Part shown: piece after piece, positions 19,912-64,000 of the stretch | Position numbering within the stretch: position 1 is the stretch's first letter | Layout of the letters: every line of letters starts with the position of its first letter | Assembly: GCF_032444005.1 (NCBI RefSeq) | Contig: NC_091283.1 | Coordinates: 775,620,001 to 775,684,000 of the forward strand | DNA from: Ranitomeya imitator | Taxonomy: Eukaryota | Reading direction: 5' to 3' | Length of the DNA: 64,000 nucleotides | Program-made: the position numbers and the translations under genes | The notes under the pieces: generated by a model | Seen by the model: only the letters and a program-made list of their open reading frames with translations | The model's database searches: none | What the model was told of the DNA's origin: nothing

Positions 19912-20242
19912 TATGCATGTTGGCAGGGCTGGCGTCAGCACCCGGGCAAGTGCCGGGGCCCTGAGCAGGCAGGGGGCCCACTCGCCGCCGGGGATACTGG
20001 CGCGCTATAGTGCAGGCCCCCGCGAGTGGACCCCCCGCCTTCTCCGGGCTTCGGCACTTGCGATACTTACCTCTCCCTGTTCCAGCACTGCAGCGTCTTC
20101 CATCCTCTGACTGTGACGTTCAGGTCAGAGGGCGCGATGACGTCACCAGTGCGCGCCCTCTGCCTGAGCAGTCACAGCACAGAGAGCAGGAAGACGCCGA
20201 CGATGAGGAGTCCAGAGCAGAGCAGCGACAAGCAACGAGAGG

Positions 20243-23200: not shown

Positions 23201-26052
23201 AGCCTGCAAAAGTTCCTGGGCTTTGCTAATTTTTATCGGTGCTTCATCGCTAATTTTTCTACTGTTGCTAAACCGTTGACTGATTTGACCAAGAAGGGTG
23301 CTGATGTGGTCAATTGGTCTTCTGCGGCTGTAGAGGCTTTTCAGGAGTTGAAGCGTCGTTTTTCTTCTGCCCCTGTGTTGTGCCAGCCAGATGTTTCGCT
23401 TCCGTTTCAGGTTGAGGTTGATGCTTCTGAGATTGGAGCAGGGGCTGTTTTGTCGCAAAGAAGTTCTGATGGCTCGGTGATGAAACCATGTGCTTTCTTT
23501 TCTAGAAAGTTTTCGCCTGCTGAGCGTAACTATGATGTTGGTAATCGTGAATTGTTGGCCATGAAGTGGGCATTCGAGGAGTGGCGTCATTGGCTGGAAG
23601 GAGCCAAGCATCGCGTGGTGGTCTTGACAGATCACAAGAATTTGACTTATCTTGAGTCTGCCAAACTGTTGAATCCGAGACAGGCTCGATGGTCGTTATT
23701 TTTCTCCCGTTTTGATTTTGTGGTTTCGTACCTTCCGGGCTCTAAGAATGTGAAGGCTGATGGCCTGTCAAGGAGTTTTGTGCCTGACTCTCCGGGTGTT
23801 CCTGAGCCGGCGGGTATTCTCAAAGAGGGGGTAATTTTGTCTGCCATCTCCCCTGATTTGCGGCGGGTGCTGCAAAAATTTCAGGCTGATAGACCTGACA
23901 GTTGCCCAGCGGAGAAACTGTTTGTCCCTGATAGATGGACTAGTAGAGTTATCTCTGAGATTCATTGTTCAGTGTTGGCTGGGCATCCTGGAATCTTTGG
24001 TACCAGAGATTTGGTGGCTAGATCCTTCTGGTGGCCGTCTTTGTCGCGGGATGTGCGTTCTTTTGTGCAGTCCTGTGGGACTTGTGCTCGGGCTAAGCCC
24101 TGCTGTTCTCATGCCAGTGGGTTGCTTTTGCCCTTGCCGGTCCCGAAGAGGCCCTGGACGCATATTTCCATGGATTTTATTTCGGATCTCCCCGTCTCTC
24201 AAAAGATGTCGGTCATTTGGGTGGTTTGTGATCGCTTTTCTAAGATGGTCCATTTGGTACCTTTGTCTAAATTGCCTTCCTCCTTTGATTTGGTGCCATT
24301 ATTTTTCCAGCATGTGGTTCGTTTACATGGTATCCCGGAGAACATCGTTTCTGACAGAGGTTCCCAGTTTGTTTCGAGGTTTTGGCGATCCTTTTGTGCT
24401 AGGATGGGCATTGATTTGTCTTTCCTCGGCTTTCCATCCTCAGAGAAATGGCCAAACCGAACGAACTAATCAAACTTTGGAAACATATCTGAGATGCTTT
24501 GTTTCTGCTGATCAGGATGATTGGGTGTCCTTCTTGCCGTTGGCTGAGTTCGCCCATAATAATCGGGCCAGCTCGGCTACTTTGGTTTCGCCGTTTTTCT
24601 GCAATTCTGGTTTCCATCCTCGTTTCTCTTCAGGGCAGGTTGAGTCTTCAGACTGTCCTGGTGTAGATACTGTGGTGGACAGGTTGCAGCAGATTTGGAC
24701 TCATGTGGTGGACAATTTGACATTGTCCCAGGAGAAGGCTCAACGTTTCGCTAACCGCCGGCGCTGTGTGGGTCCCCGACTTCGTGTTGGGGATTTGTTT
24801 TGGTTGTCGTCTCGTTATGTTCCTATGAAGGTTTCCTCTCCTAAGTTTAAGCCTCGTTTCATTGGTCCGTATGAGATTTCTGAGGTTATCAATCCTGTGT
24901 CATTTCGTTTGGCCCTTCCTGCTTCTTTTGCCATCCATAATGTGTTCCATAGGTCGTTATTGCGGAGATACGTGGCGCCTGTGGTTCCATCCGTTGATCC
25001 TTCTGCCCCGGTGTTAGTTGAGGGGGAGTTGGAGTATGTGGTGGAGAAGATTTTGGATTCTCGTGTTTCGAGACGGAAACTCCAGTACCTGGTCAAGTGG
25101 AAGGGTTATGGTCAGGAAGATAATTCCTGGGTTTTTGCCTCTGATGTTCATGCTGCCGATCTGGTTCGTGCCTTTCATTTGGCTCGTCCTGGTCGGCCTG
25201 GGGGCTCTGGTGAGGGTTCGGTGACCCCTCCTCAAGGGGGGGGTACTGTTGTGAATTCTGTTGTCGGGCTCCCTCCTGTGGTCATGAATGATGCTTCAGC
25301 TGGTTCTGTCCATGGACTTCCTCTGGTGGGTGTTTCTGAGTTTCCTTTCACAGGTGACGAGGTTAATTCGTTAGCTGCTGCTCTATTTAACTCCACTTAG
25401 ATCTTTGCTCCAGGCCACCTGTCAATGTTCCAGTATTGGTCTAGTTCACTCCTGGATCGTTCTTGTGACATGTCTTCCCATCAGAAGCTAAGTTCCAGCT
25501 TGTATTTCTTGGGTTTGCTATTTTTCTGTCCAGCTTGCTATTTAATTTGTTGTCTTGCTTGCTTGAAGCTCTGGGACGCAGAGGGAGCACCTCCGTACCG
25601 TTAGTCGGTGCGGAGGGTCTTTTTGCGCCCTCTGCGTGGTCTTTTTGTAGGTTTTTGTGCTGACCGCAAAGTAACCTTTCCTATCCTCGGTCTGTTCAGT
25701 AAGTCGGGCCTCACTTTGCTTAATCTATTTCATCTCTGTGTTTGTATTTTCATCTTTACTCACAGTCATTATATGTGGGGGGCTGCCTTTTCCTTTGGGG
25801 AATTTCTCTGAGGCAAGGTAGGCTTTATTTTTCTATTTTCAGGGCTAGCTAGTTTCTTAGGCTGTGCCGAGTTGCATAGGGAGCGTTAGGCGCAATCCAC
25901 GGCTATTTCTAGTGTGGTTGATAGGTTTAGGGTTTGCGGTCAGCAGAGTTCCCACGTCCCAGAGCTCGTCCTTTATTATCAGTATCTATCAGGTCATTCC
26001 GTGTGCTCTTAACCACCAGGTCCATTATTGTCCTGACCACCAGGTCATAACA
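20243..26052 (+). mobile_element. Full-length Sushi-like chromoviral Gypsy LTR retrotransposon (defective)
   Basis: LTRs 20243-21049 and 25247-26052 (TGTT...AACA); purine tract before the 3' LTR; gagagg on both flanks; gag-pol motifs in order. Confidence 0.95.
21186..25246 (+). pseudogene. Gypsy gag-pol pseudogene (gag, protease, RT, RNase H, integrase, chromodomain)
   Basis: CFYCGDSTHAISDC knuckle; FVDSGAALN protease; YLDDILV RT; VDASEIGAGA RNase H; H-H-C-C and MDFI/DRG integrase; EKILDSR...YLVKWKGY chromodomain. Stops at ~21345 and ~21378; frameshifts at ~22511 and ~24420. Confidence 0.92.
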
Positions 26053-26320: not shown

Positions 26321-27876
26321 CAGTTAGGGCCAGAAATATTTGGACAGTGACACAAGTTTTGTTATTTTAGCTGTTTACAAAAACATGTTCAGAAATACAA
26401 TTATATATATAACATGGGCTGAAAGTGCACACTCCCAGCTGCAATATGATAGTTTCCACATCCAAATCGGAGAAAGGGTTTAGGAATCATAGCTCTGTAA
26501 TGCATAGCGTCCTCTTTTTCAAGGGACCAAAAGTAATTGGACAATGGACTCTAAGGGCTGCAATTAACTCTGAAGGCGTCTCCCTCGTTAACCTGTAATC
26601 AATGAAGTAGTTAAAAGGTCAGGGGTGGATTCCAGGTGTGTGGTTTTGCATTTGGAAGCTGTTGCTGTGAGCAGACAACATGCGGTCAAAGGAACTCTCA
26701 ATTGAGGTGAAGCAGAACATCCTGAGGCTGAAAAAAAAGAAAAAATCCATCAGAGAGATAGCAGACATGCTTGGAGTAGCAAAATCAACAGTTGGGTACA
26801 TTCTGAGAAAAAAGGAATTGACTGGTGAGCTTGGGAACTCAAAAAGGCCTGGGCGTCCACGGATGACAACAGTGGTGGATGATCGCCGCATACTTAATTT
26901 GGTGAAGAAGAACCCATTCACAACATCAACTGAAGTCCAGAACACTCTCAGTGAAGTAGGTGTATCTGTCTGTAAGTCAACAGTAAAGAGAAGACTCCAT
27001 GACAGTAAATACAAAGGGTTCACATCTAGATGCAAACATGAGACAAAGATCAACCTGTACCAGAATGATGGGAAGAAAAAAGTTTGGAGAAGAAAGGGAA
27101 CGGCACATGATCCAAGGCACACCACATCCTCTGTAAAACATGGTGGAGGCAACGTGATGGCATGGGCATGCATGGCTTTCAATGGCACTGGGTCACTTGT
27201 GTTTATTGATGACATAAGAGCAGACAAGAGTAGCCGGATGAATTCTGAAGTGTACCGGGATATACTTTCAGCCCAGATTCAACCAAATGCTGCAAAGTTG
27301 ATTGGACGGCGCTTCATAGTACAGATGGACAATGACCCCAAGCATACAGCCAAAGCTACCCAGGAGTTCATGAGTGCCAAAAAGTGGAACATTCTGCAAT
27401 GGCCAAGTCAATCTCCAGATCTAAACCCAATTGAGCATGCATTTCACTTGCTCAAATCCAGACTTAAGACGGAAAGACCCACAAACAAGCAAGACCTGAA
27501 GGCTGCGGCTGTAAAGGCCTGGCAAAGCATTAAGAAGGAGGAAACCCAGCGTTTGGTGATGTCCATGGGTTCCAGACTTAAGGCAGTGATTGCCTCCAAA
27601 GGATTTGCAACAAAATATTGAAAATAAAAATATTTTGTTTGGGTTATGTTTATTTGTCCAATTACTTTTGACCTCCTAAAATGTGGAGTGTTTGTAAAGA
27701 AATGTGTACAATTCCTACATTTTCTATCAGATATTTTTGTTCAACCCTTCAAATTAAACGTTACAATCTGCACTTGAATTCTGTTGTAGAGGTTTCATTT
27801 CAAATCCAATGTGGTGGCATGCAGAGCCCAACTCGCGAAAATTGTGTCACTGTCCAAATATTTCTGGCCCTAACTG
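26321..27876 (+). mobile_element. Tc1 (DD34E) transposon, complete ends
   Basis: TIR cagttagggccagaaatatttggacagtgacac at both ends; TA flanks. Confidence 0.95.
26680..27621 (+). CDS. Tc1 transposase, 313 aa, with an in-frame deletion of the first catalytic Asp
   Basis: HTH region, GRPR, MDNDPKH...SPDLNPIE (34-residue spacing); SRCKHETKIN where W.DETK is expected. Confidence 0.85.
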   Translation: MRSKELSIEVKQNILRLKKKKKSIREIADMLGVAKSTVGYILRKKELTGELGNSKRPGRPRMTTVVDDRRILNLVKKNPFTTSTEVQNTLSEVGVSVCKSTVKRRLHDSKYKGFTSRCKHETKINLYQNDGKKKVWRRKGTAHDPRHTTSSVKHGGGNVMAWACMAFNGTGSLVFIDDIRADKSSRMNSEVYRDILSAQIQPNAAKLIGRRFIVQMDNDPKHTAKATQEFMSAKKWNILQWPSQSPDLNPIEHAFHLLKSRLKTERPTNKQDLKAAAVKAWQSIKKEETQRLVMSMGSRLKAVIASKGFATKY

Positions 27877-39659: not shown

Positions 39660-41122
39660 AATGCATCAGTGACGTCTGCGCGGTATGTGACTAGTGTATT
39701 AGCGTCACCTGTTTGCGGTATGTGTTTTGTATGTTAGCGGCCTATGTATGCGGTATGTATCTAGTGTGTTAGTGGCATCTGTGTGTGGTATGTGTCTAAT
39801 GTATTACTCTCGTCTGTGTGCGGTATGTGTCTAGTGTATTAGTGACATCTGTGTGCGGTATGTGTCTAGTGTATTAGTGACATCTGTGTGCGGTATGTGT
39901 CTAGTGTATTAGTGACATCTGTGTGCGGTATGTGTCTAGTGTATTAGTGACATCTGTGTGCGGTATGTGTCTAGTGTATTAGTGACATCTGTGTGCGGTA
40001 TGTGTCTAGTGTATTAGTGACATCTGTGTGCGGTATGTGTCCTGTGTAAGTGACATCTGTGTGCGGTATGTGTCCTGTGTTAGAGGCATCTGTGTGCGGT
40101 ATGTGTCTAGTGTATTAGTGACATCTGTGTGCGGTATGCGTCCTGTGTTAGAGGCATCTGTGTGCGGTATGTGTCTTGTGTTAGAGGCATCTGTGTGCGC
40201 TATGTGTCCTGTGTTAGAGGCATCTATGTGCGGTATGTGTCATGTGTTAGAGGCATCTATGTGCGGTAAGTGTCCTGTGTAAGTGGTGTCTATGTGCGGT
40301 AAGTGTCCTGTGTAAGTGGTGTCTATGTGCGGTAAGTGTCCTGTGTAAGTGGTGTCTATGTGCGGTAAGTGTCCTGTGTAAGTGACGTCTGTGCGCGGTA
40401 TGTGTCCTGTGTTAGAGGCATCTGTGTGCGGTATGTGTTCTGTTAGTGGCATCTATGTGCAGTATGTGTCCTGTCTTAGTGGCGTCTGTGTGTGGTATGT
40501 GTTCTGTTAGTAACATCTGTGTGCGGTATGTGTCCTGTGTAAGTGGCATCTATGTGCGGTATGTGTCCTGTCTTAGTGGCGTCTGTGTGTGGTATGTGTT
40601 CTGTTAGTAACATCTGTGTGCGGTATGTGTCCTGTGTAAGTGGCATCTATGTGCGGTATGTGTCCTGTCTTAGTGGCGTCTGTGTGTGGTATGTGTTCTG
40701 TTAGTAACATCTGTGTGCGGTATGTGTCCTGTGTAAGTGGCATCTATGTGCGGTATGTGTCCTGTCTTAGTGGCGTCTGTGTGCGGTATGTGTTCTGTTA
40801 GTAACATCTGTGTGCGGTATGTGTCCTGTGTTAGTGGCATCTATGTGCGGTATGTGTCCTGTCTTAGTGGCATCTGTGTGTGTTATGTGTCTAATGTATT
40901 ACTCTCGTCTGTGTGCGGTATGTGTCTAGTGTGTTAGTGACATCTGTATGCGGTATGTGTTCTGTTAGTGACATCTGTGTGCGGTATCTGTCCTGTGTTA
41001 GTGGCATCTATGTGCGGTATGTGTCCTGTCTTAGTGGCGTCTGTGTGCGGTATATGTTCTGTTAGTGGCATCTGTGTGCGGTATGTGTCTAGTAGATAAG
41101 TGGCGTCTGTGTGCGCTATGTG
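39660..41122. repeat. 33-35-bp minisatellite (tgtgtgcggtatgtgtctagtgtattagtgacatc)
   Basis: About 40 units with variant subarrays and a three-unit higher-order repeat at ~40440-40860. Confidence 0.9.
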
Positions 41123-49000: not shown

Positions 49001-49179
49001 GAGACAGAATTGCCTCCTAGAAAATATTAATGTCCTCTGTGCATTCTCTTAAAAATTAAATGTACTTACCCCCTACACATAAACATTTTGTTGGACACCA
49101 CAGCTCCCCACAAAATACAATGGCTCCACAAACGGCTCCCCACACGCTGAATAAAGCCCTCCACATGGTGTAATGACAA

Positions 49180-50680
49180 TGGCCCCCACAGCCCTCCCTC
49201 CCACAGTATGATAGCCCCCCACACAGTATGATGTCTCCCCACAGTGCAATGGCTCTACAGTACCCACACACTGTATGATGGCCCCCACAGCCCTCCCTCC
49301 CACAGTATGATAGCCCCCCACACAGTATGATGTCTCCCCACAGTGCAATGGCTCTACAGTACCCACACACTGTATGATGGCTCCCACAGCCCTCCCTCCC
49401 ACAGTATGATAGCCCCCCACACACTATGATGTCTCCCCACAGTACAATGGCTCTACAGTACCCACACACTGTATGATGGTCCCACAGCCCTCCCTCCCAC
49501 AGTATGATAGCCCCCCACACAGTATGATGTCTCCCCACAGTACAATGGCTCTACAGTACCCACACACTGTATGATGGCCCCCACAGCCCTCCCTCCCACA
49601 GTATGATAGCCCCCCACACACTATGATGTCTCCCCACAGTACAATGGCTCTACAGCACCCACACACTGTATGATGGCCCCCACAGCCCTCCCTCCCACAG
49701 TATGATAGCCCCCCCACACAGTATGATGTCTCCCCACAGTGCAATGGCTCTACAGTACCCACACACTGTATGATGGCCCCCACAGCCCTCCCTCCCACAG
49801 TATGATAGCCCCCACACACTATGATGTCTCCCCACAGTACAATGGCTCTACAGTACCCACACACTGTATGATGGTCCCACAGCCCTCCCTCCCACAGTAT
49901 GATAGCCCCCCACACAGTATGATGTCTCCCCACAGTACAATGGCTCTACAGTACCCACACACTGTATGATGGCCCCCACAGCCCTCCCTCCCACAGTATG
50001 ATAGCCCCCCACACAGTATGATGTCTCCCCACAGTGCAATGGCTCTACAGTACCCACACACTGTATGATGGCCCCCACAGCCCTCCCTCCCACAGTATGA
50101 TAGCCCCCCACACACTATGATGTCTCCCCACAGTACAATGGCTCTACAGTACCCACACACTGTATGATGGTCCCACAGCCCTCCCTCCCACAGTATGATA
50201 GCCCCCCACACAGTATGATGTCTCCCCACAGTACAATGGCTCTACAGTACCCACACACTGTATGATGGCCCCACAGCCCTCCCTCCCACAGTATGATAGC
50301 CCCCCACACACTATGATGTCTCCCCACAGTGCAATGGCTCTACAGTACCCACACACTGTATGATGGCCCCCACAGCCCTCCCTCCCACAGTATGATAGCC
50401 CCCCACACAGTATGATGTCTCCCCACAGTGCAATGGCTCTACAGTACCCACACACTGTATGGTGGCCCCCACAGCCCTCCCTCCCACAGTATGATAGCCC
50501 CCCACATAGTATGATGTCTCCCCACAGTACAATGGCTCTACAGTACCCACACACAGTATGATGGTCCCACAGCCCTCCCTCCCACAGTATGATAGCCCCC
50601 CACACACTATGATGTCTCCCCACAGTGCAATGGCTCTACAGTACCCACACACTGTATGATGGTCCCACAGCTCCCACACA
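49180..50680. repeat. About 99-bp composite minisatellite
   Basis: Unit period 99 (49192, 49291, 49390); about 15 copies built from cccacacagtatgat subrepeats. Confidence 0.93.
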
Positions 50681-51238: not shown

Positions 51239-51518
51239 GGCCCCTTCACATTAAGCGACGCTGCAGCGATACCAACAACGATGTCGATCGCTGCAGCGTC
51301 GCTGTTTGGTCGCTGGAGAGCTGTCACACAGACCGCTCTCCAGCGACCAACGATCCCGAAGTCCCCGGGTAACCAGGGTAAACATCGGGTAACTAAGCGC
51401 AGGGCCGCGCTTAGTAACCCGATGTTTACCCTGGTTACCAGCGTAAAAGTAAAAAAAAAAAAAAACACTACATACTTACCTACCGCTGTCTGTCCCCGGC
51501 GCTGTGCTTCTCTGCACT
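51239..51518. mobile_element. Left half of a Harbinger-type MITE, interrupted by the CR1
   Basis: TAA + ggccccttcaca terminus; internal palindromes; breaks off at ctgcactg where the array leader begins. Confidence 0.65.
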
Positions 51519-51536
51519 GCTTCTCTGAGATCCAGC

Positions 51537-54500
51537 CTTCAGGAGGCTAATTTGCATATTCCAGGTGCCTTCTGGGAGAAGCGAAGTCTCCCTAAGCTAG
51601 AAGATCGTTGGGTACAGCCGGGACCAGCTGCTTCGAAAGCATCACCAAACCAGGGATTCAAGCTTCAGGAGGCTAATTTGCATATTCCAGGTGCCTTCTG
51701 GGAGAAGCGAAGTCTCCCTAAGCTAGAAGATCGTTGGGTACAGCCGGGACCAGCTGCTTCGAAAGCATCACCAAACCAGGGATTCAAGCTTCAGGAGGCT
51801 AATTTGCATATTCCAGGTGCCTTCTGGGAGAAGCGAAGTCTCCCTAAGCTAGAAGATCGTTGGGTACAGCCGGGACCAGCTGCTTCGAAAGCATCACCAA
51901 ACCAGGGATTCAAGCTTCAGGAGGCTAATTTGCATATTCCAGGTGCCTTCTGGGAGAAGCGAAGTCTCCCTAAGCTAGAAGATCGTTGGGTACAGCCGGG
52001 ACCAGCTGCTTCGAAAGCATCACCAAACCAGGGATTCAAGCTTCAGGAGGCTAATTTGCATATTCCAGGTGCCTTCTGGGAGAAGCGAAGTCTCCCTAAG
52101 CTAGAAGATCGTTGGGTACAGCCGGGACCAGCTGCTTCGAAAGCATCACCAAACCAGGGATTCAAGCTTCAGGAGGCTAATTTGCATATTCCAGGTGCCT
52201 TCTGGGAGAAGCGAAGTCTCCCTAAGCTAGAAGATCGTTGGGTACAGCCGGGACCAGCTGCTTCGAAAGCATCACCAAACCAGGGATTCAAGCTTCAGGA
52301 GGCTAATTTGCATATTCCAGGTGCCTTCTGGGAGAAGCGAAGTCTCCCTAAGCTAGAAGATCGTTGGGTACAGCCGGGACCAGCTGCTTCGAAAGCATCA
52401 CCAAACCAGGGATTCAAGCTTCAGGAGGCTAATTTGCATATTCCAGGTGCCTTCTGGGAGAAGCGAAGTCTCCCTAAGCTAGAAGATCGTTGGGTACAGC
52501 CGGGACCAGCTGCTTCGAAAGCATCACCAAACCAGGGATTCAAGCTTCAGGAGGCTAATTTGCATATTCCAGGTGCCTTCTGGGAGAAGCGAAGTCTCCC
52601 TAAGCTAGAAGATCGTTGGGTACAGCCGGGACCAGCTGCTTCGAAAGCATCACCAAACCAGGGATTCAAGCTTCAGGAGGCTAATTTGCATATTCCAGGT
52701 GCCTTCTGGGAGAAGCGAAGTCTCCCTAAGCTAGAAGATCGTTGGGTACAGCCGGGACCAGCTGCTTCGAAAGCATCACCAAACCAGGGATTCAAGCTTC
52801 AGGAGGCTAATTTGCATATTCCAGGTGCCTTCTGGGAGAAGCGAAGTCTCCCTAAGCTAGAAGATCGTTGGGTACAGCCGGGACCAGCTGCTTCGAAAGC
52901 ATCACCAAACCAGGGATTCAAGCTTCAGGAGGCTAATTTGCATATTCCAGGTGCCTTCTGGGAGAAGCGAAGTCTCCCTAAGCTAGAAGATCGTTGGGTA
53001 CAGCCGGGACCAGCTGCTTCGAAAGCATCACCAAACCAGGGATTCAAGCTTCAGGAGGCTAATTTGCATATTCCAGGTGCCTTCTGGGAGAAGCGAAGTC
53101 TCCCTAAGCTAGAAGATCGTTGGGTACAGCCGGGACCAGCTGCTTCGAAAGCATCACCAAACCAGGGATTCAAGCTTCAGGAGGCTAATTTGCATATTCC
53201 AGGTGCCTTCTGGGAGAAGCGAAGTCTCCCTAAGCTAGAAGATCGTTGGGTACAGCCGGGACCAGCTGCTTCGAAAGCATCACCAAACCAGGGATTCAAG
53301 CTTCAGGAGGCTAATTTGCATATTCCAGGTGCCTTCTGGGAGAAGCGAAGTCTCCCTAAGCTAGAAGATCGTTGGGTACAGCCGGGACCAGCTGCTTCGA
53401 AAGCATCACCAAACCAGGGATTCAAGCTTCAGGAGGCTAATTTGCATATTCCAGGTGCCTTCTGGGAGAAGCGAAGTCTCCCTAAGCTAGAAGATCGTTG
53501 GGTACAGCCGGGACCAGCTGCTTCGAAAGCATCACCAAACCAGGGATTCAAGCTTCAGGAGGCTAATTTGCATATTCCAGGTGCCTTCTGGGAGAAGCGA
53601 AGTCTCCCTAAGCTAGAAGATCGTTGGGTACAGCCGGGACCAGCTGCTTCGAAAGCATCACCAAACCAGGGATTCAAGCTTCAGGAGGCTAATTTGCATA
53701 TTCCAGGTGCCTTCTGGGAGAAGCGAAGTCTCCCTAAGCTAGAAGATCGTTGGGTACAGCCGGGACCAGCTGCTTCGAAAGCATCACCAAACCAGGGATT
53801 CAAGCTTCAGGAGGCTAATTTGCATATTCCAGGTGCCTTCTGGGAGAAGCGAAGTCTCCCTAAGCTAGAAGATCGTTGGGTACAGCCGGGACCAGCTGCT
53901 TCGAAAGCATCACCAAACCAGGGATTCAAGCTTCAGGAGGCTAATTTGCATATTCCAGGTGCCTTCTGGGAGAAGCGAAGTCTCCCTAAGCTAGAAGATC
54001 GTTGGGTACAGCCGGGACCAGCTGCTTCGAAAGCATCACCAAACCAGGGATTCAAGCTTCAGGAGGCTAATTTGCATATTCCAGGTGCCTTCTGGGAGAA
54101 GCGAAGTCTCCCTAAGCTAGAAGATCGTTGGGTACAGCCGGGACCAGCTGCTTCGAAAGCATCACCAAACCAGGGATTCAAGCTTCAGGAGGCTAATTTG
54201 CATATTCCAGGTGCCTTCTGGGAGAAGCGAAGTCTCCCTAAGCTAGAAGATCGTTGGGTACAGCCGGGACCAGCTGCTTCGAAAGCATCACCAAACCAGG
54301 GATTCAAGCTTCAGGAGGCTAATTTGCATATTCCAGGTGCCTTCTGGGAGAAGCGAAGTCTCCCTAAGCTAGAAGATCGTTGGGTACAGCCGGGACCAGC
54401 TGCTTCGAAAGCATCACCAAACCAGGGATTCAAGCTTCAGGAGGCTAATTTGCATATTCCAGGTGCCTTCTGGGAGAAGCGAAGTCTCCCTAAGCTAGAA

Positions 54501-57500
54501 GATCGTTGGGTACAGCCGGGACCAGCTGCTTCGAAAGCATCACCAAACCAGGGATTCAAGCTTCAGGAGGCTAATTTGCATATTCCAGGTGCCTTCTGGG
54601 AGAAGCGAAGTCTCCCTAAGCTAGAAGATCGTTGGGTACAGCCGGGACCAGCTGCTTCGAAAGCATCACCAAACCAGGGATTCAAGCTTCAGGAGGCTAA
54701 TTTGCATATTCCAGGTGCCTTCTGGGAGAAGCGAAGTCTCCCTAAGCTAGAAGATCGTTGGGTACAGCCGGGACCAGCTGCTTCGAAAGCATCACCAAAC
54801 CAGGGATTCAAGCTTCAGGAGGCTAATTTGCATATTCCAGGTGCCTTCTGGGAGAAGCGAAGTCTCCCTAAGCTAGAAGATCGTTGGGTACAGCCGGGAC
54901 CAGCTGCTTCGAAAGCATCACCAAACCAGGGATTCAAGCTTCAGGAGGCTAATTTGCATATTCCAGGTGCCTTCTGGGAGAAGCGAAGTCTCCCTAAGCT
55001 AGAAGATCGTTGGGTACAGCCGGGACCAGCTGCTTCGAAAGCATCACCAAACCAGGGATTCAAGCTTCAGGAGGCTAATTTGCATATTCCAGGTGCCTTC
55101 TGGGAGAAGCGAAGTCTCCCTAAGCTAGAAGATCGTTGGGTACAGCCGGGACCAGCTGCTTCGAAAGCATCACCAAACCAGGGATTCAAGCTTCAGGAGG
55201 CTAATTTGCATATTCCAGGTGCCTTCTGGGAGAAGCGAAGTCTCCCTAAGCTAGAAGATCGTTGGGTACAGCCGGGACCAGCTGCTTCGAAAGCATCACC
55301 AAACCAGGGATTCAAGCTTCAGGAGGCTAATTTGCATATTCCAGGTGCCTTCTGGGAGAAGCGAAGTCTCCCTAAGCTAGAAGATCGTTGGGTACAGCCG
55401 GGACCAGCTGCTTCGAAAGCATCACCAAACCAGGGATTCAAGCTTCAGGAGGCTAATTTGCATATTCCAGGTGCCTTCTGGGAGAAGCGAAGTCTCCCTA
55501 AGCTAGAAGATCGTTGGGTACAGCCGGGACCAGCTGCTTCGAAAGCATCACCAAACCAGGGATTCAAGCTTCAGGAGGCTAATTTGCATATTCCAGGTGC
55601 CTTCTGGGAGAAGCGAAGTCTCCCTAAGCTAGAAGATCGTTGGGTACAGCCGGGACCAGCTGCTTCGAAAGCATCACCAAACCAGGGATTCAAGCTTCAG
55701 GAGGCTAATTTGCATATTCCAGGTGCCTTCTGGGAGAAGCGAAGTCTCCCTAAGCTAGAAGATCGTTGGGTACAGCCGGGACCAGCTGCTTCGAAAGCAT
55801 CACCAAACCAGGGATTCAAGCTTCAGGAGGCTAATTTGCATATTCCAGGTGCCTTCTGGGAGAAGCGAAGTCTCCCTAAGCTAGAAGATCGTTGGGTACA
55901 GCCGGGACCAGCTGCTTCGAAAGCATCACCAAACCAGGGATTCAAGCTTCAGGAGGCTAATTTGCATATTCCAGGTGCCTTCTGGGAGAAGCGAAGTCTC
56001 CCTAAGCTAGAAGATCGTTGGGTACAGCCGGGACCAGCTGCTTCGAAAGCATCACCAAACCAGGGATTCAAGCTTCAGGAGGCTAATTTGCATATTCCAG
56101 GTGCCTTCTGGGAGAAGCGAAGTCTCCCTAAGCTAGAAGATCGTTGGGTACAGCCGGGACCAGCTGCTTCGAAAGCATCACCAAACCAGGGATTCAAGCT
56201 TCAGGAGGCTAATTTGCATATTCCAGGTGCCTTCTGGGAGAAGCGAAGTCTCCCTAAGCTAGAAGATCGTTGGGTACAGCCGGGACCAGCTGCTTCGAAA
56301 GCATCACCAAACCAGGGATTCAAGCTTCAGGAGGCTAATTTGCATATTCCAGGTGCCTTCTGGGAGAAGCGAAGTCTCCCTAAGCTAGAAGATCGTTGGG
56401 TACAGCCGGGACCAGCTGCTTCGAAAGCATCACCAAACCAGGGATTCAAGCTTCAGGAGGCTAATTTGCATATTCCAGGTGCCTTCTGGGAGAAGCGAAG
56501 TCTCCCTAAGCTAGAAGATCGTTGGGTACAGCCGGGACCAGCTGCTTCGAAAGCATCACCAAACCAGGGATTCAAGCTTCAGGAGGCTAATTTGCATATT
56601 CCAGGTGCCTTCTGGGAGAAGCGAAGTCTCCCTAAGCTAGAAGATCGTTGGGTACAGCCGGGACCAGCTGCTTCGAAAGCATCACCAAACCAGGGATTCA
56701 AGCTTCAGGAGGCTAATTTGCATATTCCAGGTGCCTTCTGGGAGAAGCGAAGTCTCCCTAAGCTAGAAGATCGTTGGGTACAGCCGGGACCAGCTGCTTC
56801 GAAAGCATCACCAAACCAGGGATTCAAGCTTCAGGAGGCTAATTTGCATATTCCAGGTGCCTTCTGGGAGAAGCGAAGTCTCCCTAAGCTAGAAGATCGT
56901 TGGGTACAGCCGGGACCAGCTGCTTCGAAAGCATCACCAAACCAGGGATTCAAGCTTCAGGAGGCTAATTTGCATATTCCAGGTGCCTTCTGGGAGAAGC
57001 GAAGTCTCCCTAAGCTAGAAGATCGTTGGGTACAGCCGGGACCAGCTGCTTCGAAAGCATCACCAAACCAGGGATTCAAGCTTCAGGAGGCTAATTTGCA
57101 TATTCCAGGTGCCTTCTGGGAGAAGCGAAGTCTCCCTAAGCTAGAAGATCGTTGGGTACAGCCGGGACCAGCTGCTTCGAAAGCATCACCAAACCAGGGA
57201 TTCAAGCTTCAGGAGGCTAATTTGCATATTCCAGGTGCCTTCTGGGAGAAGCGAAGTCTCCCTAAGCTAGAAGATCGTTGGGTACAGCCGGGACCAGCTG
57301 CTTCGAAAGCATCACCAAACCAGGGATTCAAGCTTCAGGAGGCTAATTTGCATATTCCAGGTGCCTTCTGGGAGAAGCGAAGTCTCCCTAAGCTAGAAGA
57401 TCGTTGGGTACAGCCGGGACCAGCTGCTTCGAAAGCATCACCAAACCAGGGATTCAAGCTTCAGGAGGCTAATTTGCATATTCCAGGTGCCTTCTGGGAG

Positions 57501-60500
57501 AAGCGAAGTCTCCCTAAGCTAGAAGATCGTTGGGTACAGCCGGGACCAGCTGCTTCGAAAGCATCACCAAACCAGGGATTCAAGCTTCAGGAGGCTAATT
57601 TGCATATTCCAGGTGCCTTCTGGGAGAAGCGAAGTCTCCCTAAGCTAGAAGATCGTTGGGTACAGCCGGGACCAGCTGCTTCGAAAGCATCACCAAACCA
57701 GGGATTCAAGCTTCAGGAGGCTAATTTGCATATTCCAGGTGCCTTCTGGGAGAAGCGAAGTCTCCCTAAGCTAGAAGATCGTTGGGTACAGCCGGGACCA
57801 GCTGCTTCGAAAGCATCACCAAACCAGGGATTCAAGCTTCAGGAGGCTAATTTGCATATTCCAGGTGCCTTCTGGGAGAAGCGAAGTCTCCCTAAGCTAG
57901 AAGATCGTTGGGTACAGCCGGGACCAGCTGCTTCGAAAGCATCACCAAACCAGGGATTCAAGCTTCAGGAGGCTAATTTGCATATTCCAGGTGCCTTCTG
58001 GGAGAAGCGAAGTCTCCCTAAGCTAGAAGATCGTTGGGTACAGCCGGGACCAGCTGCTTCGAAAGCATCACCAAACCAGGGATTCAAGCTTCAGGAGGCT
58101 AATTTGCATATTCCAGGTGCCTTCTGGGAGAAGCGAAGTCTCCCTAAGCTAGAAGATCGTTGGGTACAGCCGGGACCAGCTGCTTCGAAAGCATCACCAA
58201 ACCAGGGATTCAAGCTTCAGGAGGCTAATTTGCATATTCCAGGTGCCTTCTGGGAGAAGCGAAGTCTCCCTAAGCTAGAAGATCGTTGGGTACAGCCGGG
58301 ACCAGCTGCTTCGAAAGCATCACCAAACCAGGGATTCAAGCTTCAGGAGGCTAATTTGCATATTCCAGGTGCCTTCTGGGAGAAGCGAAGTCTCCCTAAG
58401 CTAGAAGATCGTTGGGTACAGCCGGGACCAGCTGCTTCGAAAGCATCACCAAACCAGGGATTCAAGCTTCAGGAGGCTAATTTGCATATTCCAGGTGCCT
58501 TCTGGGAGAAGCGAAGTCTCCCTAAGCTAGAAGATCGTTGGGTACAGCCGGGACCAGCTGCTTCGAAAGCATCACCAAACCAGGGATTCAAGCTTCAGGA
58601 GGCTAATTTGCATATTCCAGGTGCCTTCTGGGAGAAGCGAAGTCTCCCTAAGCTAGAAGATCGTTGGGTACAGCCGGGACCAGCTGCTTCGAAAGCATCA
58701 CCAAACCAGGGATTCAAGCTTCAGGAGGCTAATTTGCATATTCCAGGTGCCTTCTGGGAGAAGCGAAGTCTCCCTAAGCTAGAAGATCGTTGGGTACAGC
58801 CGGGACCAGCTGCTTCGAAAGCATCACCAAACCAGGGATTCAAGCTTCAGGAGGCTAATTTGCATATTCCAGGTGCCTTCTGGGAGAAGCGAAGTCTCCC
58901 TAAGCTAGAAGATCGTTGGGTACAGCCGGGACCAGCTGCTTCGAAAGCATCACCAAACCAGGGATTCAAGCTTCAGGAGGCTAATTTGCATATTCCAGGT
59001 GCCTTCTGGGAGAAGCGAAGTCTCCCTAAGCTAGAAGATCGTTGGGTACAGCCGGGACCAGCTGCTTCGAAAGCATCACCAAACCAGGGATTCAAGCTTC
59101 AGGAGGCTAATTTGCATATTCCAGGTGCCTTCTGGGAGAAGCGAAGTCTCCCTAAGCTAGAAGATCGTTGGGTACAGCCGGGACCAGCTGCTTCGAAAGC
59201 ATCACCAAACCAGGGATTCAAGCTTCAGGAGGCTAATTTGCATATTCCAGGTGCCTTCTGGGAGAAGCGAAGTCTCCCTAAGCTAGAAGATCGTTGGGTA
59301 CAGCCGGGACCAGCTGCTTCGAAAGCATCACCAAACCAGGGATTCAAGCTTCAGGAGGCTAATTTGCATATTCCAGGTGCCTTCTGGGAGAAGCGAAGTC
59401 TCCCTAAGCTAGAAGATCGTTGGGTACAGCCGGGACCAGCTGCTTCGAAAGCATCACCAAACCAGGGATTCAAGCTTCAGGAGGCTAATTTGCATATTCC
59501 AGGTGCCTTCTGGGAGAAGCGAAGTCTCCCTAAGCTAGAAGATCGTTGGGTACAGCCGGGACCAGCTGCTTCGAAAGCATCACCAAACCAGGGATTCAAG
59601 CTTCAGGAGGCTAATTTGCATATTCCAGGTGCCTTCTGGGAGAAGCGAAGTCTCCCTAAGCTAGAAGATCGTTGGGTACAGCCGGGACCAGCTGCTTCGA
59701 AAGCATCACCAAACCAGGGATTCAAGCTTCAGGAGGCTAATTTGCATATTCCAGGTGCCTTCTGGGAGAAGCGAAGTCTCCCTAAGCTAGAAGATCGTTG
59801 GGTACAGCCGGGACCAGCTGCTTCGAAAGCATCACCAAACCAGGGATTCAAGCTTCAGGAGGCTAATTTGCATATTCCAGGTGCCTTCTGGGAGAAGCGA
59901 AGTCTCCCTAAGCTAGAAGATCGTTGGGTACAGCCGGGACCAGCTGCTTCGAAAGCATCACCAAACCAGGGATTCAAGCTTCAGGAGGCTAATTTGCATA
60001 TTCCAGGTGCCTTCTGGGAGAAGCGAAGTCTCCCTAAGCTAGAAGATCGTTGGGTACAGCCGGGACCAGCTGCTTCGAAAGCATCACCAAACCAGGGATT
60101 CAAGCTTCAGGAGGCTAATTTGCATATTCCAGGTGCCTTCTGGGAGAAGCGAAGTCTCCCTAAGCTAGAAGATCGTTGGGTACAGCCGGGACCAGCTGCT
60201 TCGAAAGCATCACCAAACCAGGGATTCAAGCTTCAGGAGGCTAATTTGCATATTCCAGGTGCCTTCTGGGAGAAGCGAAGTCTCCCTAAGCTAGAAGATC
60301 GTTGGGTACAGCCGGGACCAGCTGCTTCGAAAGCATCACCAAACCAGGGATTCAAGCTTCAGGAGGCTAATTTGCATATTCCAGGTGCCTTCTGGGAGAA
60401 GCGAAGTCTCCCTAAGCTAGAAGATCGTTGGGTACAGCCGGGACCAGCTGCTTCGAAAGCATCACCAAACCAGGGATTCAAGCTTCAGGAGGCTAATTTG

Positions 60501-62613
60501 CATATTCCAGGTGCCTTCTGGGAGAAGCGAAGTCTCCCTAAGCTAGAAGATCGTTGGGTACAGCCGGGACCAGCTGCTTCGAAAGCATCACCAAACCAGG
60601 GATTCAAGCTTCAGGAGGCTAATTTGCATATTCCAGGTGCCTTCTGGGAGAAGCGAAGTCTCCCTAAGCTAGAAGATCGTTGGGTACAGCCGGGACCAGC
60701 TGCTTCGAAAGCATCACCAAACCAGGGATTCAAGCTTCAGGAGGCTAATTTGCATATTCCAGGTGCCTTCTGGGAGAAGCGAAGTCTCCCTAAGCTAGAA
60801 GATCGTTGGGTACAGCCGGGACCAGCTGCTTCGAAAGCATCACCAAACCAGGGATTCAAGCTTCAGGAGGCTAATTTGCATATTCCAGGTGCCTTCTGGG
60901 AGAAGCGAAGTCTCCCTAAGCTAGAAGATCGTTGGGTACAGCCGGGACCAGCTGCTTCGAAAGCATCACCAAACCAGGGATTCAAGCTTCAGGAGGCTAA
61001 TTTGCATATTCCAGGTGCCTTCTGGGAGAAGCGAAGTCTCCCTAAGCTAGAAGATCGTTGGGTACAGCCGGGACCAGCTGCTTCGAAAGCATCACCAAAC
61101 CAGGGATTCAAGCTTCAGGAGGCTAATTTGCATATTCCAGGTGCCTTCTGGGAGAAGCGAAGTCTCCCTAAGCTAGAAGATCGTTGGGTACAGCCGGGAC
61201 CAGCTGCTTCGAAAGCATCACCAAACCAGGGATTCAAGCTTCAGGAGGCTAATTTGCATATTCCAGGTGCCTTCTGGGAGAAGCGAAGTCTCCCTAAGCT
61301 AGAAGATCGTTGGGTACAGCCGGGACCAGCTGCTTCGAAAGCATCACCAAACCAGGGATTCAAGCTTCAGGAGGCTAATTTGCATATTCCAGGTGCCTTC
61401 TGGGAGAAGCGAAGTCTCCCTAAGCTAGAAGATCGTTGGGTACAGCCGGGACCAGCTGCTTCGAAAGCATCACCAAACCAGGGATTCAAGCTTCAGGAGG
61501 CTAATTTGCATATTCCAGGTGCCTTCTGGGAGAAGCGAAGTCTCCCTAAGCTAGAAGATCGTTGGGTACAGCCGGGACCAGCTGCTTCGAAAGCATCACC
61601 AAACCAGGGATTCAAGCTTCAGGAGGCTAATTTGCATATTCCAGGTGCCTTCTGGGAGAAGCGAAGTCTCCCTAAGCTAGAAGATCGTTGGGTACAGCCG
61701 GGACCAGCTGCTTCGAAAGCATCACCAAACCAGGGATTCAAGCTTCAGGAGGCTAATTTGCATATTCCAGGTGCCTTCTGGGAGAAGCGAAGTCTCCCTA
61801 AGCTAGAAGATCGTTGGGTACAGCCGGGACCAGCTGCTTCGAAAGCATCACCAAACCAGGGATTCAAGCTTCAGGAGGCTAATTTGCATATTCCAGGTGC
61901 CTTCTGGGAGAAGCGAAGTCTCCCTAAGCTAGAAGATCGTTGGGTACAGCCGGGACCAGCTGCTTCGAAAGCATCACCAAACCAGGGATTCAAGCTTCAG
62001 GAGGCTAATTTGCATATTCCAGGTGCCTTCTGGGAGAAGCGAAGTCTCCCTAAGCTAGAAGATCGTTGGGTACAGCCGGGACCAGCTGCTTCGAAAGCAT
62101 CACCAAACCAGGGATTCAAGCTTCAGGAGGCTAATTTGCATATTCCAGGTGCCTTCTGGGAGAAGCGAAGTCTCCCTAAGCTAGAAGATCGTTGGGTACA
62201 GCCGGGACCAGCTGCTTCGAAAGCATCACCAAACCAGGGATTCAAGCTTCAGGAGGCTAATTTGCATATTCCAGGTGCCTTCTGGGAGAAGCGAAGTCTC
62301 CCTAAGCTAGAAGATCGTTGGGTACAGCCGGGACCAGCTGCTTCGAAAGCATCACCAAACCAGGGATTCAAGCTTCAGGAGGCTAATTTGCATATTCCAG
62401 GTGCCTTCTGGGAGAAGCGAAGTCTCCCTAAGCTAGAAGATCGTTGGGTACAGCCGGGACCAGCTGCTTCGAAAGCATCACCAAACCAGGGATTCAAGCT
62501 TCAGGAGGCTAATTTGCATATTCCAGGTGCCTTCTGGGAGAAGCGAAGTCTCCCTAAGCTAGAAGATCGTTGGGTACAGCCGGGACCAGCTGCTTCGAAA
62601 GCATCACCAAACC
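51537..62613 (+). repeat. Tandem array of 126-bp monomers (87 full plus one 115-bp copy) at the CR1 5' end
   Basis: Period 126 (e.g. 51661, 51787); no variant units seen; runs directly into the 115-bp unique 5' UTR of the CR1. Confidence 0.97.
51550..51557 (+). promoter_or_regulatory. POU octamer ATTTGCAT (first of ~88 copies, one per monomer)
   Basis: ctaATTTGCATatt is a perfect octamer; function is inferred only. Confidence 0.5.
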
Positions 62614-62728
62614 GCGCGCCTTACGGCGCGCGAATTTTTGCCTGTAGGACATTATTGCAAGAAAGCTTGGCTGAGTAGATTACACAAGAAGGAAAACACA
62701 CAGCAAGTCAGCAGGATCTAGGAGCAAC

Positions 62729-63682
62729 ATGGCAGATGTGACAACCTACATGGTGAGCTGCAGCATGTGCTACATGTTCACAGATCGACCAGAAGAAGAA
62801 TCCAATTTCACCTGTCAGAAGTGTAGGCTAGTGGCCCTTTTAGAAGAAAAGGTGCGGGGTCTGGAAGAAAGAATAGCAACTTTGAAACTCATCAAAGAGA
62901 ATGAAGACTTTCTAGACAGAACAGAAGCATCTCTACTGGTCACAGAAGGTGCAAAAAGTGTCAGAGAACCTCCAAAAGCAGATGAGTGGAAGCATGTGAC
63001 CAAAAGAAGCAAGAAGACCATGGAGAAATCACCAACCACACAACTGAAGAACCGATATCAAATCTTTGTAGAGGATGAAGATGGCACACCTAAGAATGAA
63101 GCAATACCAGCAAGCAAAAAAGAAAAGGGCACACAGCAACAAGTGACAGCAAAAAGTACAGCCAAGAAGCAACGAAGAGTGGTGGTGGTGGGAGACTCAC
63201 TACTGAGAGGCACCGAAGCAGCCATCTGCAGACCGGACATAACTGCAAGAGAAGTATGCTGCCTTCCAGGTGCGATGATCAAGGATGTGACCGATAGGAT
63301 ACCAAAGCTCTTCAGCTCCAAGGACGTCCACCCATTTCTTCTGATACATGTTGGCACCAATGACACGGCAAGGAAGGACCTACCGACAATCTGCAAGGAC
63401 TTTGAAGAGTTGGGGAAGAAAGTAAAGGAACTGGATGCACAAGTAGTTTTTTCTTCTATCCTTCCAGTAGACGGGCATGGCACCAGGAGATGGAACAGGA
63501 TCCTTGATGCAAACAACTGGCTAAGACGATGGTGCAGACAACAAGGATTTGGATTCCTGGACCACGGTGTGAATTACTGGTATGATGGACTCCTCGCCAG
63601 AGACGGACTACACCTCAACAAACCTGGGAAACACACATTCGCCAGAAGACTCGCTACACTCATCAGGAGGGCGTTAAACTAG
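62729..63682 (+). CDS. CR1 ORF1p: zinc finger, coiled coil, SGNH esterase-like domain (317 aa)
   Basis: CSMC...CQKC; leucine heptads; VVVGDSLLRG, IHVGTND and DGLHLN blocks. Confidence 0.9.
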   Translation: MADVTTYMVSCSMCYMFTDRPEEESNFTCQKCRLVALLEEKVRGLEERIATLKLIKENEDFLDRTEASLLVTEGAKSVREPPKADEWKHVTKRSKKTMEKSPTTQLKNRYQIFVEDEDGTPKNEAIPASKKEKGTQQQVTAKSTAKKQRRVVVVGDSLLRGTEAAICRPDITAREVCCLPGAMIKDVTDRIPKLFSSKDVHPFLLIHVGTNDTARKDLPTICKDFEELGKKVKELDAQVVFSSILPVDGHGTRRWNRILDANNWLRRWCRQQGFGFLDHGVNYWYDGLLARDGLHLNKPGKHTFARRLATLIRRALN

Positions 63683-63819
63683 AAGAAGAGGGGACGGGAA
63701 GAAAAACATTAGACTCGAACAAAGACGACCCAGGAAAACATACTCAGAAGGGAGGTAAGAACATTTCTAAAACAATCCACAGTGAGGAGATTGGAACAAA
63801 ACAAAATCCTCTAAACTGC

Positions 63820-64000
63820 ATGCTCGCAAACGCCAGAAGCCTGACAAACAAGATGGAAGAACTAGAAGCAGAAATATCTACAGGTAACTTTGACATAGTG
63901 GGAATAACCGAGACATGGTTAGATGAAAGCTATGACTGGGCAGTTAACTTACAGGGTTACAGTCTGTTTAGAAAGGATCGTAAAAATCGGAGAGGAGGAG
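63820..64000 (+). CDS. CR1 ORF2 N-terminus (APE endonuclease), partial
   Basis: MLANARSLTNK...DIVGITETW...GYSLFRKDR...RGG; the frame is already open upstream, overlapping the ORF1 stop. Confidence 0.88.
   Translation, partial: MLANARSLTNKMEELEAEISTGNFDIVGITETWLDESYDWAVNLQGYSLFRKDRKNRRGG

What the first reader, a model, noticed from the sequence alone, without database searches (positions are those of the whole stretch)
51537..63682. CR1 LINE whose 5' end is an 11-kb array of ~88 octamer-bearing 126-bp monomers
Seen: the array joins, via a 115-bp UTR with a GC hairpin (gcgcgccttacggcgcgc), directly to an intact CR1 ORF1. Every monomer has a perfect POU octamer (tATGCAAATtag on the minus strand). 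Established: mouse L1 uses tandem ~200-bp 5' monomers as an expandable promoter, and CR1 copies are usually 5'-truncated. Inference: this may be a monomer-promoter system in a CR1 lineage, possibly driven by Oct1/Pou5f3 in oocytes or embryos. The array is longer than a whole CR1 and could act as an enhancer on neighbours. I do not know of a description of this for CR1 but cannot search.
Basis: partly seen in the sequence, partly recalled or inferred. Interest (0 to 1): 0.85.

Follow-up and report, generated by a model that had tools for sequence, protein, structure and literature searches.

The report
CR1 retrotransposon with a tandem-monomer 5' end
A young CR1-type jumping gene in a poison-frog genome has a 5' end built like that of mouse L1 (tandem 126-bp units, a cut-off last unit, a short unique linker, then ORF1), and at this locus it holds 88 letter-perfect units, though promoter activity is still only inferred.

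Summary
Positions 51537-62613 hold 87 full copies and one 115-bp copy of a 126-bp unit, with no mismatch in 11,077 bp. Each copy carries ATTTGCAT. A 115-bp linker with a GC hairpin follows, then an intact 317-aa esterase-type ORF1 and the start of an endonuclease ORF2. ORF1 is 90-99% identical to Ranitomeya imitator proteins and homologous to turtle, lizard and bird CR1 ORF1.

The array is not a chance neighbour. Six R. imitator gene models at other loci contain translated monomers. Two of them run from monomers into this same linker, and one uses the identical cut-off-monomer junction. So monomers plus linker belong to this CR1 family, as in the mouse L1 5'UTR.

Promoter activity, POU binding and enhancer action are untested. 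The unit is not a CpG island. The hairpin is missing or broken in the two other copies seen.

The 88 perfect copies are probably a very recent local expansion; the two other arrays that can be bounded span at most about 27 and 46 units. DNA of other copies could not be fetched, so the genome-wide test remains open. I found no published description of this for CR1.

Verdict: new variant of a known kind, moderate interest.

The parts
51537..62613 (+). Array of 87 full copies and one 115-bp copy of a 126-bp monomer, all identical. Sense orientation relative to the CR1 ORFs.
   Evidence: No ATG on the sense strand. CpG observed/expected 0.48 and GC 51.6%.
51550..51557 (+). First of 88 ATTTGCAT octamers (unit positions 14-21). 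A CAGGTG E-box lies at unit positions 26-31 and a CAGCTG at 89-94.
   Evidence: Regex scans. Motif matches only; no binding data.
62499..62613 (+). Innermost monomer, cut off at unit position 115 where it meets the linker.
   Evidence: P0121, at another locus, has the same cut-off point: its monomer peptide stops at ...ASPN and is followed by the linker peptide.
62614..62728 (+). Unique 115-bp linker ('tether') between the monomers and ORF1. It has stop codons in all three frames and no ATG.
   Evidence: No similarity to the monomer. Linker peptides recur in P0121 and P0122.
62613..62632 (+). GC hairpin, an 8-bp stem with a 4-nt loop, at the monomer/linker junction.
   Evidence: the stem is present in both the MFE and centroid folds, but the region as a whole is not unusually stable (z = -0.97). 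It is not conserved: P0121 lacks the 3' arm and P0122 lacks the whole segment.
62729..63682 (+). ORF1, 317 aa, intact, with an SGNH/GDSL esterase domain and a good start context (AACATGG).
   Evidence: It is 90-99% identical to R. imitator copies and 65.5% to D. tinctorius by script alignment (BLASTP gave 64%). It is 34-50% identical to turtle, lizard and bird proteins.
63586..64000 (+). Start of ORF2 (apurinic-type endonuclease). Its frame overlaps the end of ORF1, the first in-frame ATG is at 63820, and it runs off the window.
   Evidence: It is 50% identical over 74 aa to the endonuclease start of a turtle ORF1-endonuclease model, P0058. A Pfam scan of the 133-aa stretch 63601-63999 gave no match, as it covers only the first part of the domain.

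Best explanation
This is the 5' part of a young, possibly still active, CR1-group LINE of Ranitomeya imitator or a very close relative. Its 5'UTR is modular: head-to-tail 126-bp monomers, an innermost monomer cut at position 115, a unique 115-bp linker, then ORF1.

Shown: the monomers and the linker are inherited together as part of the element family, because the same junction is found at other loci and in a second monomer subtype.

Inferred:
- For monomers to be copied to new loci, transcription must start inside or upstream of them. Each monomer therefore most likely carries an internal RNA polymerase II promoter module, with the octamer as a candidate element.
- Repetition would protect the promoter against the 5' truncation typical of CR1 reverse transcription. 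This is the logic proposed for mouse L1 monomers.
- The 88 letter-perfect units at this locus are most likely not what was retrotransposed. They look like a very recent in-place expansion by unequal exchange or replication slippage of an array that began with far fewer units.
For: - Anatomy and perfect periodicity.
- ORF1 is an esterase-type CR1 ORF1 with full-length homologues in turtles, squamates, crocodilians and birds. The ORF2 start is 50% identical to a turtle endonuclease start.
- An exhaustive profile-free search of 1.84 billion proteins found the translated monomer only in R. imitator gene models, P0121-P0125. A second search added P0128. None of their non-monomer parts maps to this window, so these are six other loci.
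- P0122 reads five or more monomers and then a 23-residue peptide that matches window 62650-62718 in 22 of 23 residues.
- P0121 reads six or more monomers of a second subtype (E2/W33). It stops at the same ...ASPN cut-off and continues with PRAIRICL-stop, which matches the window's PRALRRANFCL-stop in the neighbouring frame.
- Monomers are alike within an array and differ between arrays, as expected for arrays that expand and homogenise locally.
- The sense strand of monomer plus linker has no ATG (joint shuffle probability about 0.016), and the ORF1 ATG has a strong context. Both fit a translated leader.
- Local expansion: ORF1 copies differ by 1-10%, yet the 88 units differ by nothing. Other arrays in the window keep their variation. 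The P0121 and P0122 gene models span only 4.3 and 6.6 kb, which caps their arrays at about 27 and 46 units.
Against: - No transcript, start-site or binding data were available. Promoter function is inference only.
- The unit is not a CpG island (observed/expected 0.48, at or slightly below the 0.54 of window 1-49000), unlike mammalian L1 promoters (PMC5381506).
- No TATA box was found, and the two Inr-like matches are at the chance rate.
- The recurrence evidence is at peptide level, from two informative gene models in a draft annotation. The P0122 junction differs: monomer position about 8 joins linker position about 38.
- The 3' end of the element lies outside the window. Target-site duplications bracketing array plus CR1 could not be checked, and the intactness of ORF2 is unknown.
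- Whether typical full-length copies carry monomers is unknown.
Confidence: 0.6

Rival explanations
1. Passenger satellite. A master CR1 copy once sat downstream of a 126-bp minisatellite. Read-through transcripts carried some units along (5' transduction), so descendants share the junction. On this view the units have no promoter role, transcription depends on the linker or on host promoters, and the array here is simply satellite growth.
For: The shared junction is explained equally well. The unit has no CpG-island or TATA character. It has no similarity to the rest of the element. TE-derived tandem arrays, including CR1-derived ones, are known in frogs (PMC10794172).
Against: Two monomer subtypes both keep the junction, which suggests sustained propagation from monomer-bearing sources. 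A LINE needs an internal promoter to keep propagating, and the 115-bp linker would have to supply all of it. The ATG-free sense strand fits selection on a leader.
Confidence: 0.2
2. Assembly artefact in copy number or identity. The layout is real, but the figure of 88 units, the perfect identity, or both come from consensus building over a long perfect repeat.
For: Zero differences in 11 kb is extreme. Tandem monomers are known to be hard to assemble (PMC6454616).
Against: Nine or more other tandem arrays in the same window retain 2-33% mismatches, so there is no general homogenisation. Both array borders are clean single-base transitions into unique sequence. P0122's five units, from an independent assembly, are also identical to each other and to these units at peptide level.
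Confidence: 0.12
3. Chance juxtaposition. A full-length CR1 happened to insert at the edge of an unrelated, pre-existing satellite.
For: The window is dense in minisatellites and transposons.
Against: The same monomer-to-linker join occurs at two other loci with different upstream genes, once at the identical monomer position. Independent insertions would not reproduce this.
Confidence: 0.05
4. The 3,724-codon open frame through the array (51504-62678) encodes a repetitive protein.
For: The frame is open because 126 = 3 x 42 and one frame of the unit lacks stops. Public gene models include it as exons.
Against: There is no ATG anywhere in the frame. One open frame among six is expected in about 58% of such units. 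Pfam hits have no domain that passes on its own and are repeat-driven. The only relatives are chimeric models from the same species, entered through monomer-internal AG sites.
Confidence: 0.01

Closest known systems
Mouse L1 (L1Md A, Gf, Tf) monomeric 5'UTR
   Same: Sense-oriented head-to-tail monomers at the 5' end, an incomplete innermost monomer, a unique tether before ORF1, monomer subtypes, and greater similarity within an array than between arrays (PMC9022269; PMC6454616; PMC5381506).
   Different: A different LINE clade (CR1, esterase-type ORF1). The unit is 126 bp rather than about 200 bp. It is not a CpG island and has no YY1 motif. There are 88 units here against an average of 3-4 in young mouse subfamilies. 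Promoter activity is proven in mouse and untested here.
Short tandem duplications in other mammalian L1 5'UTRs (rat, hyrax, horse, elephant, opossum)
   Same: Motifs of 70-100 bp duplicated two or three times in a LINE 5'UTR. This shows the design arises repeatedly (PMC5381506).
   Different: All of these are L1. The same survey found no tandem duplication in lizard L1 5'UTRs and reports none for the short frog and fish ones. This case is CR1 in a frog and is far more repeated.
Transposon-derived minisatellites and satellites in frogs
   Same: Xenopus tropicalis has tandem arrays derived from portions of LINE/CR1 and other elements (PMC10794172). The 88-unit array may be such an expansion caught at birth.
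   Different: Here the array still sits in its original place on an apparently intact element, and the units are also part of the transposing unit.
Chicken CR1-H 5'UTR promoter
   Same: A full-length CR1 whose 5'UTR is an active, demethylated promoter in oocytes (bioRxiv 10.64898/2026.03.19.712899). This supports the idea that CR1 5'UTRs carry germline promoters.
   Different: That 5'UTR is described as a CpG island. The nearby LL2R tandem array lies about 13 kb from the start of that transcription unit, downstream along the transcript, and is not part of the element.

Membership tests
CR1-group LINE | ORF1 with an SGNH/GDSL esterase domain, homologous to amniote CR1 ORF1 | tested here: met
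   Pfam Lipase_GDSL_2 at 37.9 bits against a cut-off of 32.9. Full-length hits to turtle, squamate, crocodilian and bird ORF1-like proteins, with E-values from 1e-94 down to about 1e-43.
CR1-group LINE | ORF2 with an N-terminal apurinic-type endonuclease followed by a CR1-clade reverse transcriptase | tested here: inconclusive
   Only the first ~75 residues of the endonuclease are in the window. They are 50% identical to a turtle ORF1-endonuclease model whose precomputed Pfam domains include Exo_endo_phos. The reverse transcriptase lies beyond position 64000, so CR1 proper cannot be separated from L2 or Rex1 by phylogeny.
CR1-group LINE | 3'UTR hairpin and short microsatellite tail | not testable with these tools
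   The 3' end is outside the window, and DNA of other copies could not be fetched.
Monomer-type LINE 5'UTR (as in mouse L1) | Head-to-tail sense monomers, then a truncated monomer, then a unique tether, then ORF1 | tested here: met
Monomer-type LINE 5'UTR (as in mouse L1) | The same architecture in independent genomic copies, with variable monomer number and subtype | tested here: met
   P0121 and P0122 at other loci show the monomer-to-tether junction; there are two subtypes; P0121's units differ from one another. The evidence is at peptide level from only two informative loci.
Monomer-type LINE 5'UTR (as in mouse L1) | Monomers have promoter activity and contain transcription start sites | not testable with these tools
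   No RNA or reporter data. No transcript-derived protein containing the monomer was found outside genome annotations.
Monomer-type LINE 5'UTR (as in mouse L1) | CpG-island character of the promoter | tested here: not met
   CpG observed/expected 0.48 at 51.6% GC, close to the window background of 0.54.
Monomer-type LINE 5'UTR (as in mouse L1) | The element belongs to the L1 clade | tested here: not met
   The ORF1 is esterase-type and CR1-like. The resemblance is therefore one of design, not of family.
Octamer (POU)-dependent promoter or enhancer | Consensus ATTTGCAT is present and retained in variant monomers | tested here: met
   It is present in every unit. The N-L-H codons that spell it are retained in all of the roughly 16 variant monomers at six other loci, while other positions vary. 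The statistical power is weak.
Octamer (POU)-dependent promoter or enhancer | POU factor binding and octamer-dependent activity | not testable with these tools
   Needs ChIP or CUT&RUN and mutated reporters.
Free-standing satellite DNA | Long arrays at many loci, unlinked to the transposon | not tested
Four of the six other loci (P0123, P0124, P0125, P0128) show monomers without information on what follows them.

The most novel reading that the evidence does not exclude
A CR1 lineage in dendrobatid frogs has independently evolved an expandable, octamer-bearing monomer promoter, convergent with rodent L1. This locus captures the birth of a satellite from that promoter: 88 perfect units, younger than roughly 0.1-0.3 million years or still being homogenised. 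It could serve as a strong germline or early-embryo transcription or enhancer hub.
Probability: 0.3. Interest if true: 0.72.

Novelty: new variant of a known kind. Interest (0 to 1): 0.55.

Why it matters
CR1 is the dominant LINE of birds, turtles and crocodilians and is common in frogs, but its promoter biology is little known because nearly all copies are 5'-truncated. A CR1 family with a modular, repeatable 5' end would be a second, independent case of the 'monomer' answer to 5' truncation, so far described only in L1. It would also give a tractable system, with a 126-bp unit and one obvious motif, for testing how monomer number sets LINE transcription. The perfect 11-kb array is a candidate snapshot of a satellite arising from a transposon promoter. 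On the practical side, the open frame through the monomers has already contaminated public gene models of R. imitator.

Tried and rejected
- Fetching DNA around other copies. Six look-ups on R. imitator and D. tinctorius proteins returned no DNA because the assembly files are too large. The direct test of what lies upstream of other ORF1s therefore failed.
- Metagenome scans for the monomer (exact 24-mer) and for ORF1 relatives found nothing.
- The one retrievable related contig is L001, a JGI contig whose ORF1 is 63% identical. It has only 166 bp upstream, A-rich and without monomers, so it is uninformative.
- A phage-collection search was empty, as expected.
- Rfam found no known RNA family in 61800-64000 at E <= 1.
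- The monomer has no similarity to the linker, to the CR1 body, to the upstream flank or to anything else in the window.
- The protein-coding reading of the 3,724-codon frame was rejected.
- Canonical GT-AG splicing does not explain the P0122 junction, by my reading of the window sequence. I treat it as a real deletion variant, but this is inference.
- Seven full-text literature searches ran (an eighth failed on a term that was too short) and found no description of a monomeric 5'UTR in CR1 (the seventh was on R. imitator genome papers). The library is partial, and repeat databases such as Repbase and Dfam could not be consulted.
Full report
**What is there**

Tandem Repeats Finder reports one array at 51537-62613 with period 126, 87.9 copies and 100% matches. 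Cutting it in register gives 87 identical 126-bp units and a final 115-bp unit identical over its length. That is no mismatch in 11,077 bp, and the periodicity stops within one base at both borders.

Each unit carries ATTTGCAT on the + strand at positions 14-21. All 88 occurrences of this word on the + strand of the window lie inside the array. The unit also has CAGGTG and CAGCTG E-box words. It has no TATA, CCAAT, Sp1 or YY1 word, and only chance-level Inr matches. It is 51.6% GC with CpG observed/expected 0.48, close to the 0.54 of the rest of the window, so it is not a CpG island.

After the cut-off unit comes a unique 115-bp linker (62614-62728). The linker begins with an 8-bp GC stem and 4-nt loop. 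It has stops in all frames and no ATG.

ORF1 (62729-63682, 317 aa) starts in a good context (AACATGG) and has a GDSL/SGNH esterase domain above Pfam's cut-off. A second frame, open from 63586 to the window end, encodes the start of an apurinic-type endonuclease. It is 50% identical over 74 residues to the corresponding part of a turtle ORF1-endonuclease model.

**Whose genome and which element**

The best ORF1 hits are Ranitomeya imitator proteins, 90-99% identical over the aligned parts. Dendrobates tinctorius follows at about 65%. A long series of full-length matches follows in turtles, squamates, crocodilians and birds.

From established knowledge, avian genomes carry essentially only CR1 as a LINE with such an ORF1. 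I therefore file the element in the CR1 group. The reverse transcriptase and the 3' end lie beyond the window, so CR1 proper cannot be separated from its sister clades here.

The neighbourhood is transposon-rich. It holds a Ty3/gypsy pol at 21.4-25.4 kb, a Tc1/mariner transposase at 26.7-27.6 kb and many minisatellites. I recognised no host gene.

**Is the array part of the element?**

This is the key question. The window alone cannot answer it, because it has no second copy of the monomer or of the LINE and the element's 3' end is missing.

One frame of the unit is open, so I used the translated monomer as a probe. A full scan of 1.84 billion representative proteins found it only in five R. 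imitator gene models. A word-indexed search added a sixth. None of their non-monomer parts maps to this window, so they mark six other loci. Those non-monomer parts are a PI3K helical domain, a LINE zinc-binding domain, a lysyl oxidase, a GPCR, a bHLH protein and one part with no recognised domain.

Two of the six are informative about what follows the monomers.
- P0122 reads five or more units identical to the window's. It then reads a 23-residue peptide that is the window's linker at 62650-62718 with one substitution.
- P0121 reads six or more units of a second subtype, with two fixed changes (E2, W33). It stops at exactly the same cut-off (...ASPN) and continues PRAIRICL-stop. The window reads PRALRRANFCL-stop in the adjacent frame. 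This is the same junction with a 1-nt indel and a 9-nt deletion.

Independent insertions next to a satellite would not reproduce one junction. I conclude that monomers plus linker are a heritable part of this CR1 family. That is the architecture of the mouse L1 5'UTR (PMC9022269; PMC5381506).

There are caveats. The evidence is at peptide level and rests on two loci in a draft annotation. The P0122 junction is different: the monomer is left at about position 8 and the linker is entered at about position 38. By my reading GT-AG splicing cannot produce this, so it is probably a deletion variant.

**How it most likely works**

If monomers are carried to new loci, transcripts must begin within or upstream of them. 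For a LINE that must bring its promoter along, the economical reading is that each unit is an internal promoter module. Repetition would then buffer the promoter against 5' truncation, as argued for mouse L1 (PMC6454616).

Weak supporting signs:
- The sense strand of unit plus linker lacks any ATG (joint shuffle probability about 0.016).
- All of the roughly 16 variant units at other loci keep the three codons that spell the octamer, while other positions vary.

Signs against over-reading:
- There is no CpG island.
- The hairpin is absent or broken in both other junctions.
- The region does not fold better than shuffles (z = -0.97).
- No transcript evidence could be obtained.

Promoter function, POU dependence and any enhancer effect remain inference.

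**Why 88 perfect units?**

Copies of ORF1 in the genome differ by 1-10%, and P0121's six units differ from one another. Every other tandem array in this window keeps 2-33% mismatches. The perfection is therefore specific to this array and is not a general assembly habit.

At about 1e-9 substitutions per bp per year, 11 kb should gain its first change in about 0.1 Myr, with a 95% bound of about 0.3 Myr.

The P0121 and P0122 models span only 4.3 and 6.6 kb from first exon to the stop in the linker. Their arrays can therefore hold at most about 27 and 46 units in that assembly. Young mouse L1s average 3-4 monomers.

I therefore read the 88 units as a very recent in-place expansion, or continuing homogenisation, of a shorter inherited array. 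An error in copy number during assembly is a minor alternative that spanning reads would settle.

**Comparison with what is known**

Tandem 5' monomers are documented for L1: many in mouse, two in rat and hyrax, three in horse, elephant and opossum. The same survey found no tandem duplication in lizard L1 5'UTRs and describes none in the short frog and fish L1 5'UTRs (PMC5381506). Zhou and Smith note that only in mouse are the monomers numerous and 5'-terminal.

For CR1, the papers I could search give two relevant findings. The chicken CR1-H 5'UTR acts as a CpG-island promoter in oocytes. CR1-derived tandem arrays exist in Xenopus. None describes a monomer-tether 5'UTR. Repeat databases could not be consulted, so a curated consensus with such repeats may exist.

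The element fails L1 membership and the CpG-island feature. It works like, but is not, an L1Md-type promoter. I rate it a new variant of a known kind.

**Verdict**

Confidence by claim:
- The architecture is a family trait: about 0.8.
- The monomers act as the promoter: about 0.55.
- This array is a local recent expansion: about 0.7.

Interest is moderate (0.55). It is a neat convergent design and a striking array, but the functional claim is untested and the genome-wide linkage test is still to be done.

Noticed in passing
window 51504-62678 (+); proteins P0121-P0125, P0128: The stop-free frame of the monomer creates a 3,724-codon pseudo-ORF. It has been absorbed as terminal 'exons' into at least six public R. 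imitator gene models (PI3K-like, GPCR, bHLH, lysyl oxidase and others), entered at AG sites inside the monomer. This is annotation contamination, not real protein.
   Followed up: yes
window 49179-50671: A separate C-rich 99-bp tandem array (15 copies, 96% matches, with an internal 20-bp sub-repeat) lies 0.9 kb upstream of the monomer array. It has no CpG at all and no similarity to the 126-bp unit.
   Followed up: partly
window 51240-51465: A palindromic, MITE-like element with long internal inverted repeats ends in a run of 15 A. It lies about 70 bp upstream of the first monomer.
   Followed up: no
window 21417-25400 (+) and 26680-27621 (+): A Ty3/gypsy pol with RT, RNase H, integrase and chromodomain, split over overlapping frames, and a Tc1/mariner (Sleeping Beauty-like) transposase ORF. 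The region is transposon-dense, and I saw no host gene.
   Followed up: partly
window 3525-5249, 6182-6800, 11672-13828, 18976-19912, 39695-41122: Five further minisatellite arrays with periods of 20, 22, 24, 43 and 33 bp and 8-82 copies. The five main arrays show 84-94% matches. This is an unusually high density of tandem repeats for 64 kb.
   Followed up: no
It is flanked by two minus-strand ORFs of 331 and 322 aa with no convincing Pfam match (one weak coiled-coil-type hit).
   Followed up: no
L001:1-1776: A contig from a JGI 'metagenome' sample (3300008908) encodes a CR1 ORF1 63% identical to this one and the start of an ORF2. This is vertebrate, probably frog or reptile, sequence inside a microbial data set.
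   Followed up: partly
window 62650-62718 versus P0122; window 62613-62650 versus P0121: The linker varies between copies. One copy lacks the 3' arm of the GC hairpin through a 9-nt deletion. Another joins monomer position ~8 directly to linker position ~38. The hairpin is therefore unlikely to be essential.
   Followed up: yes
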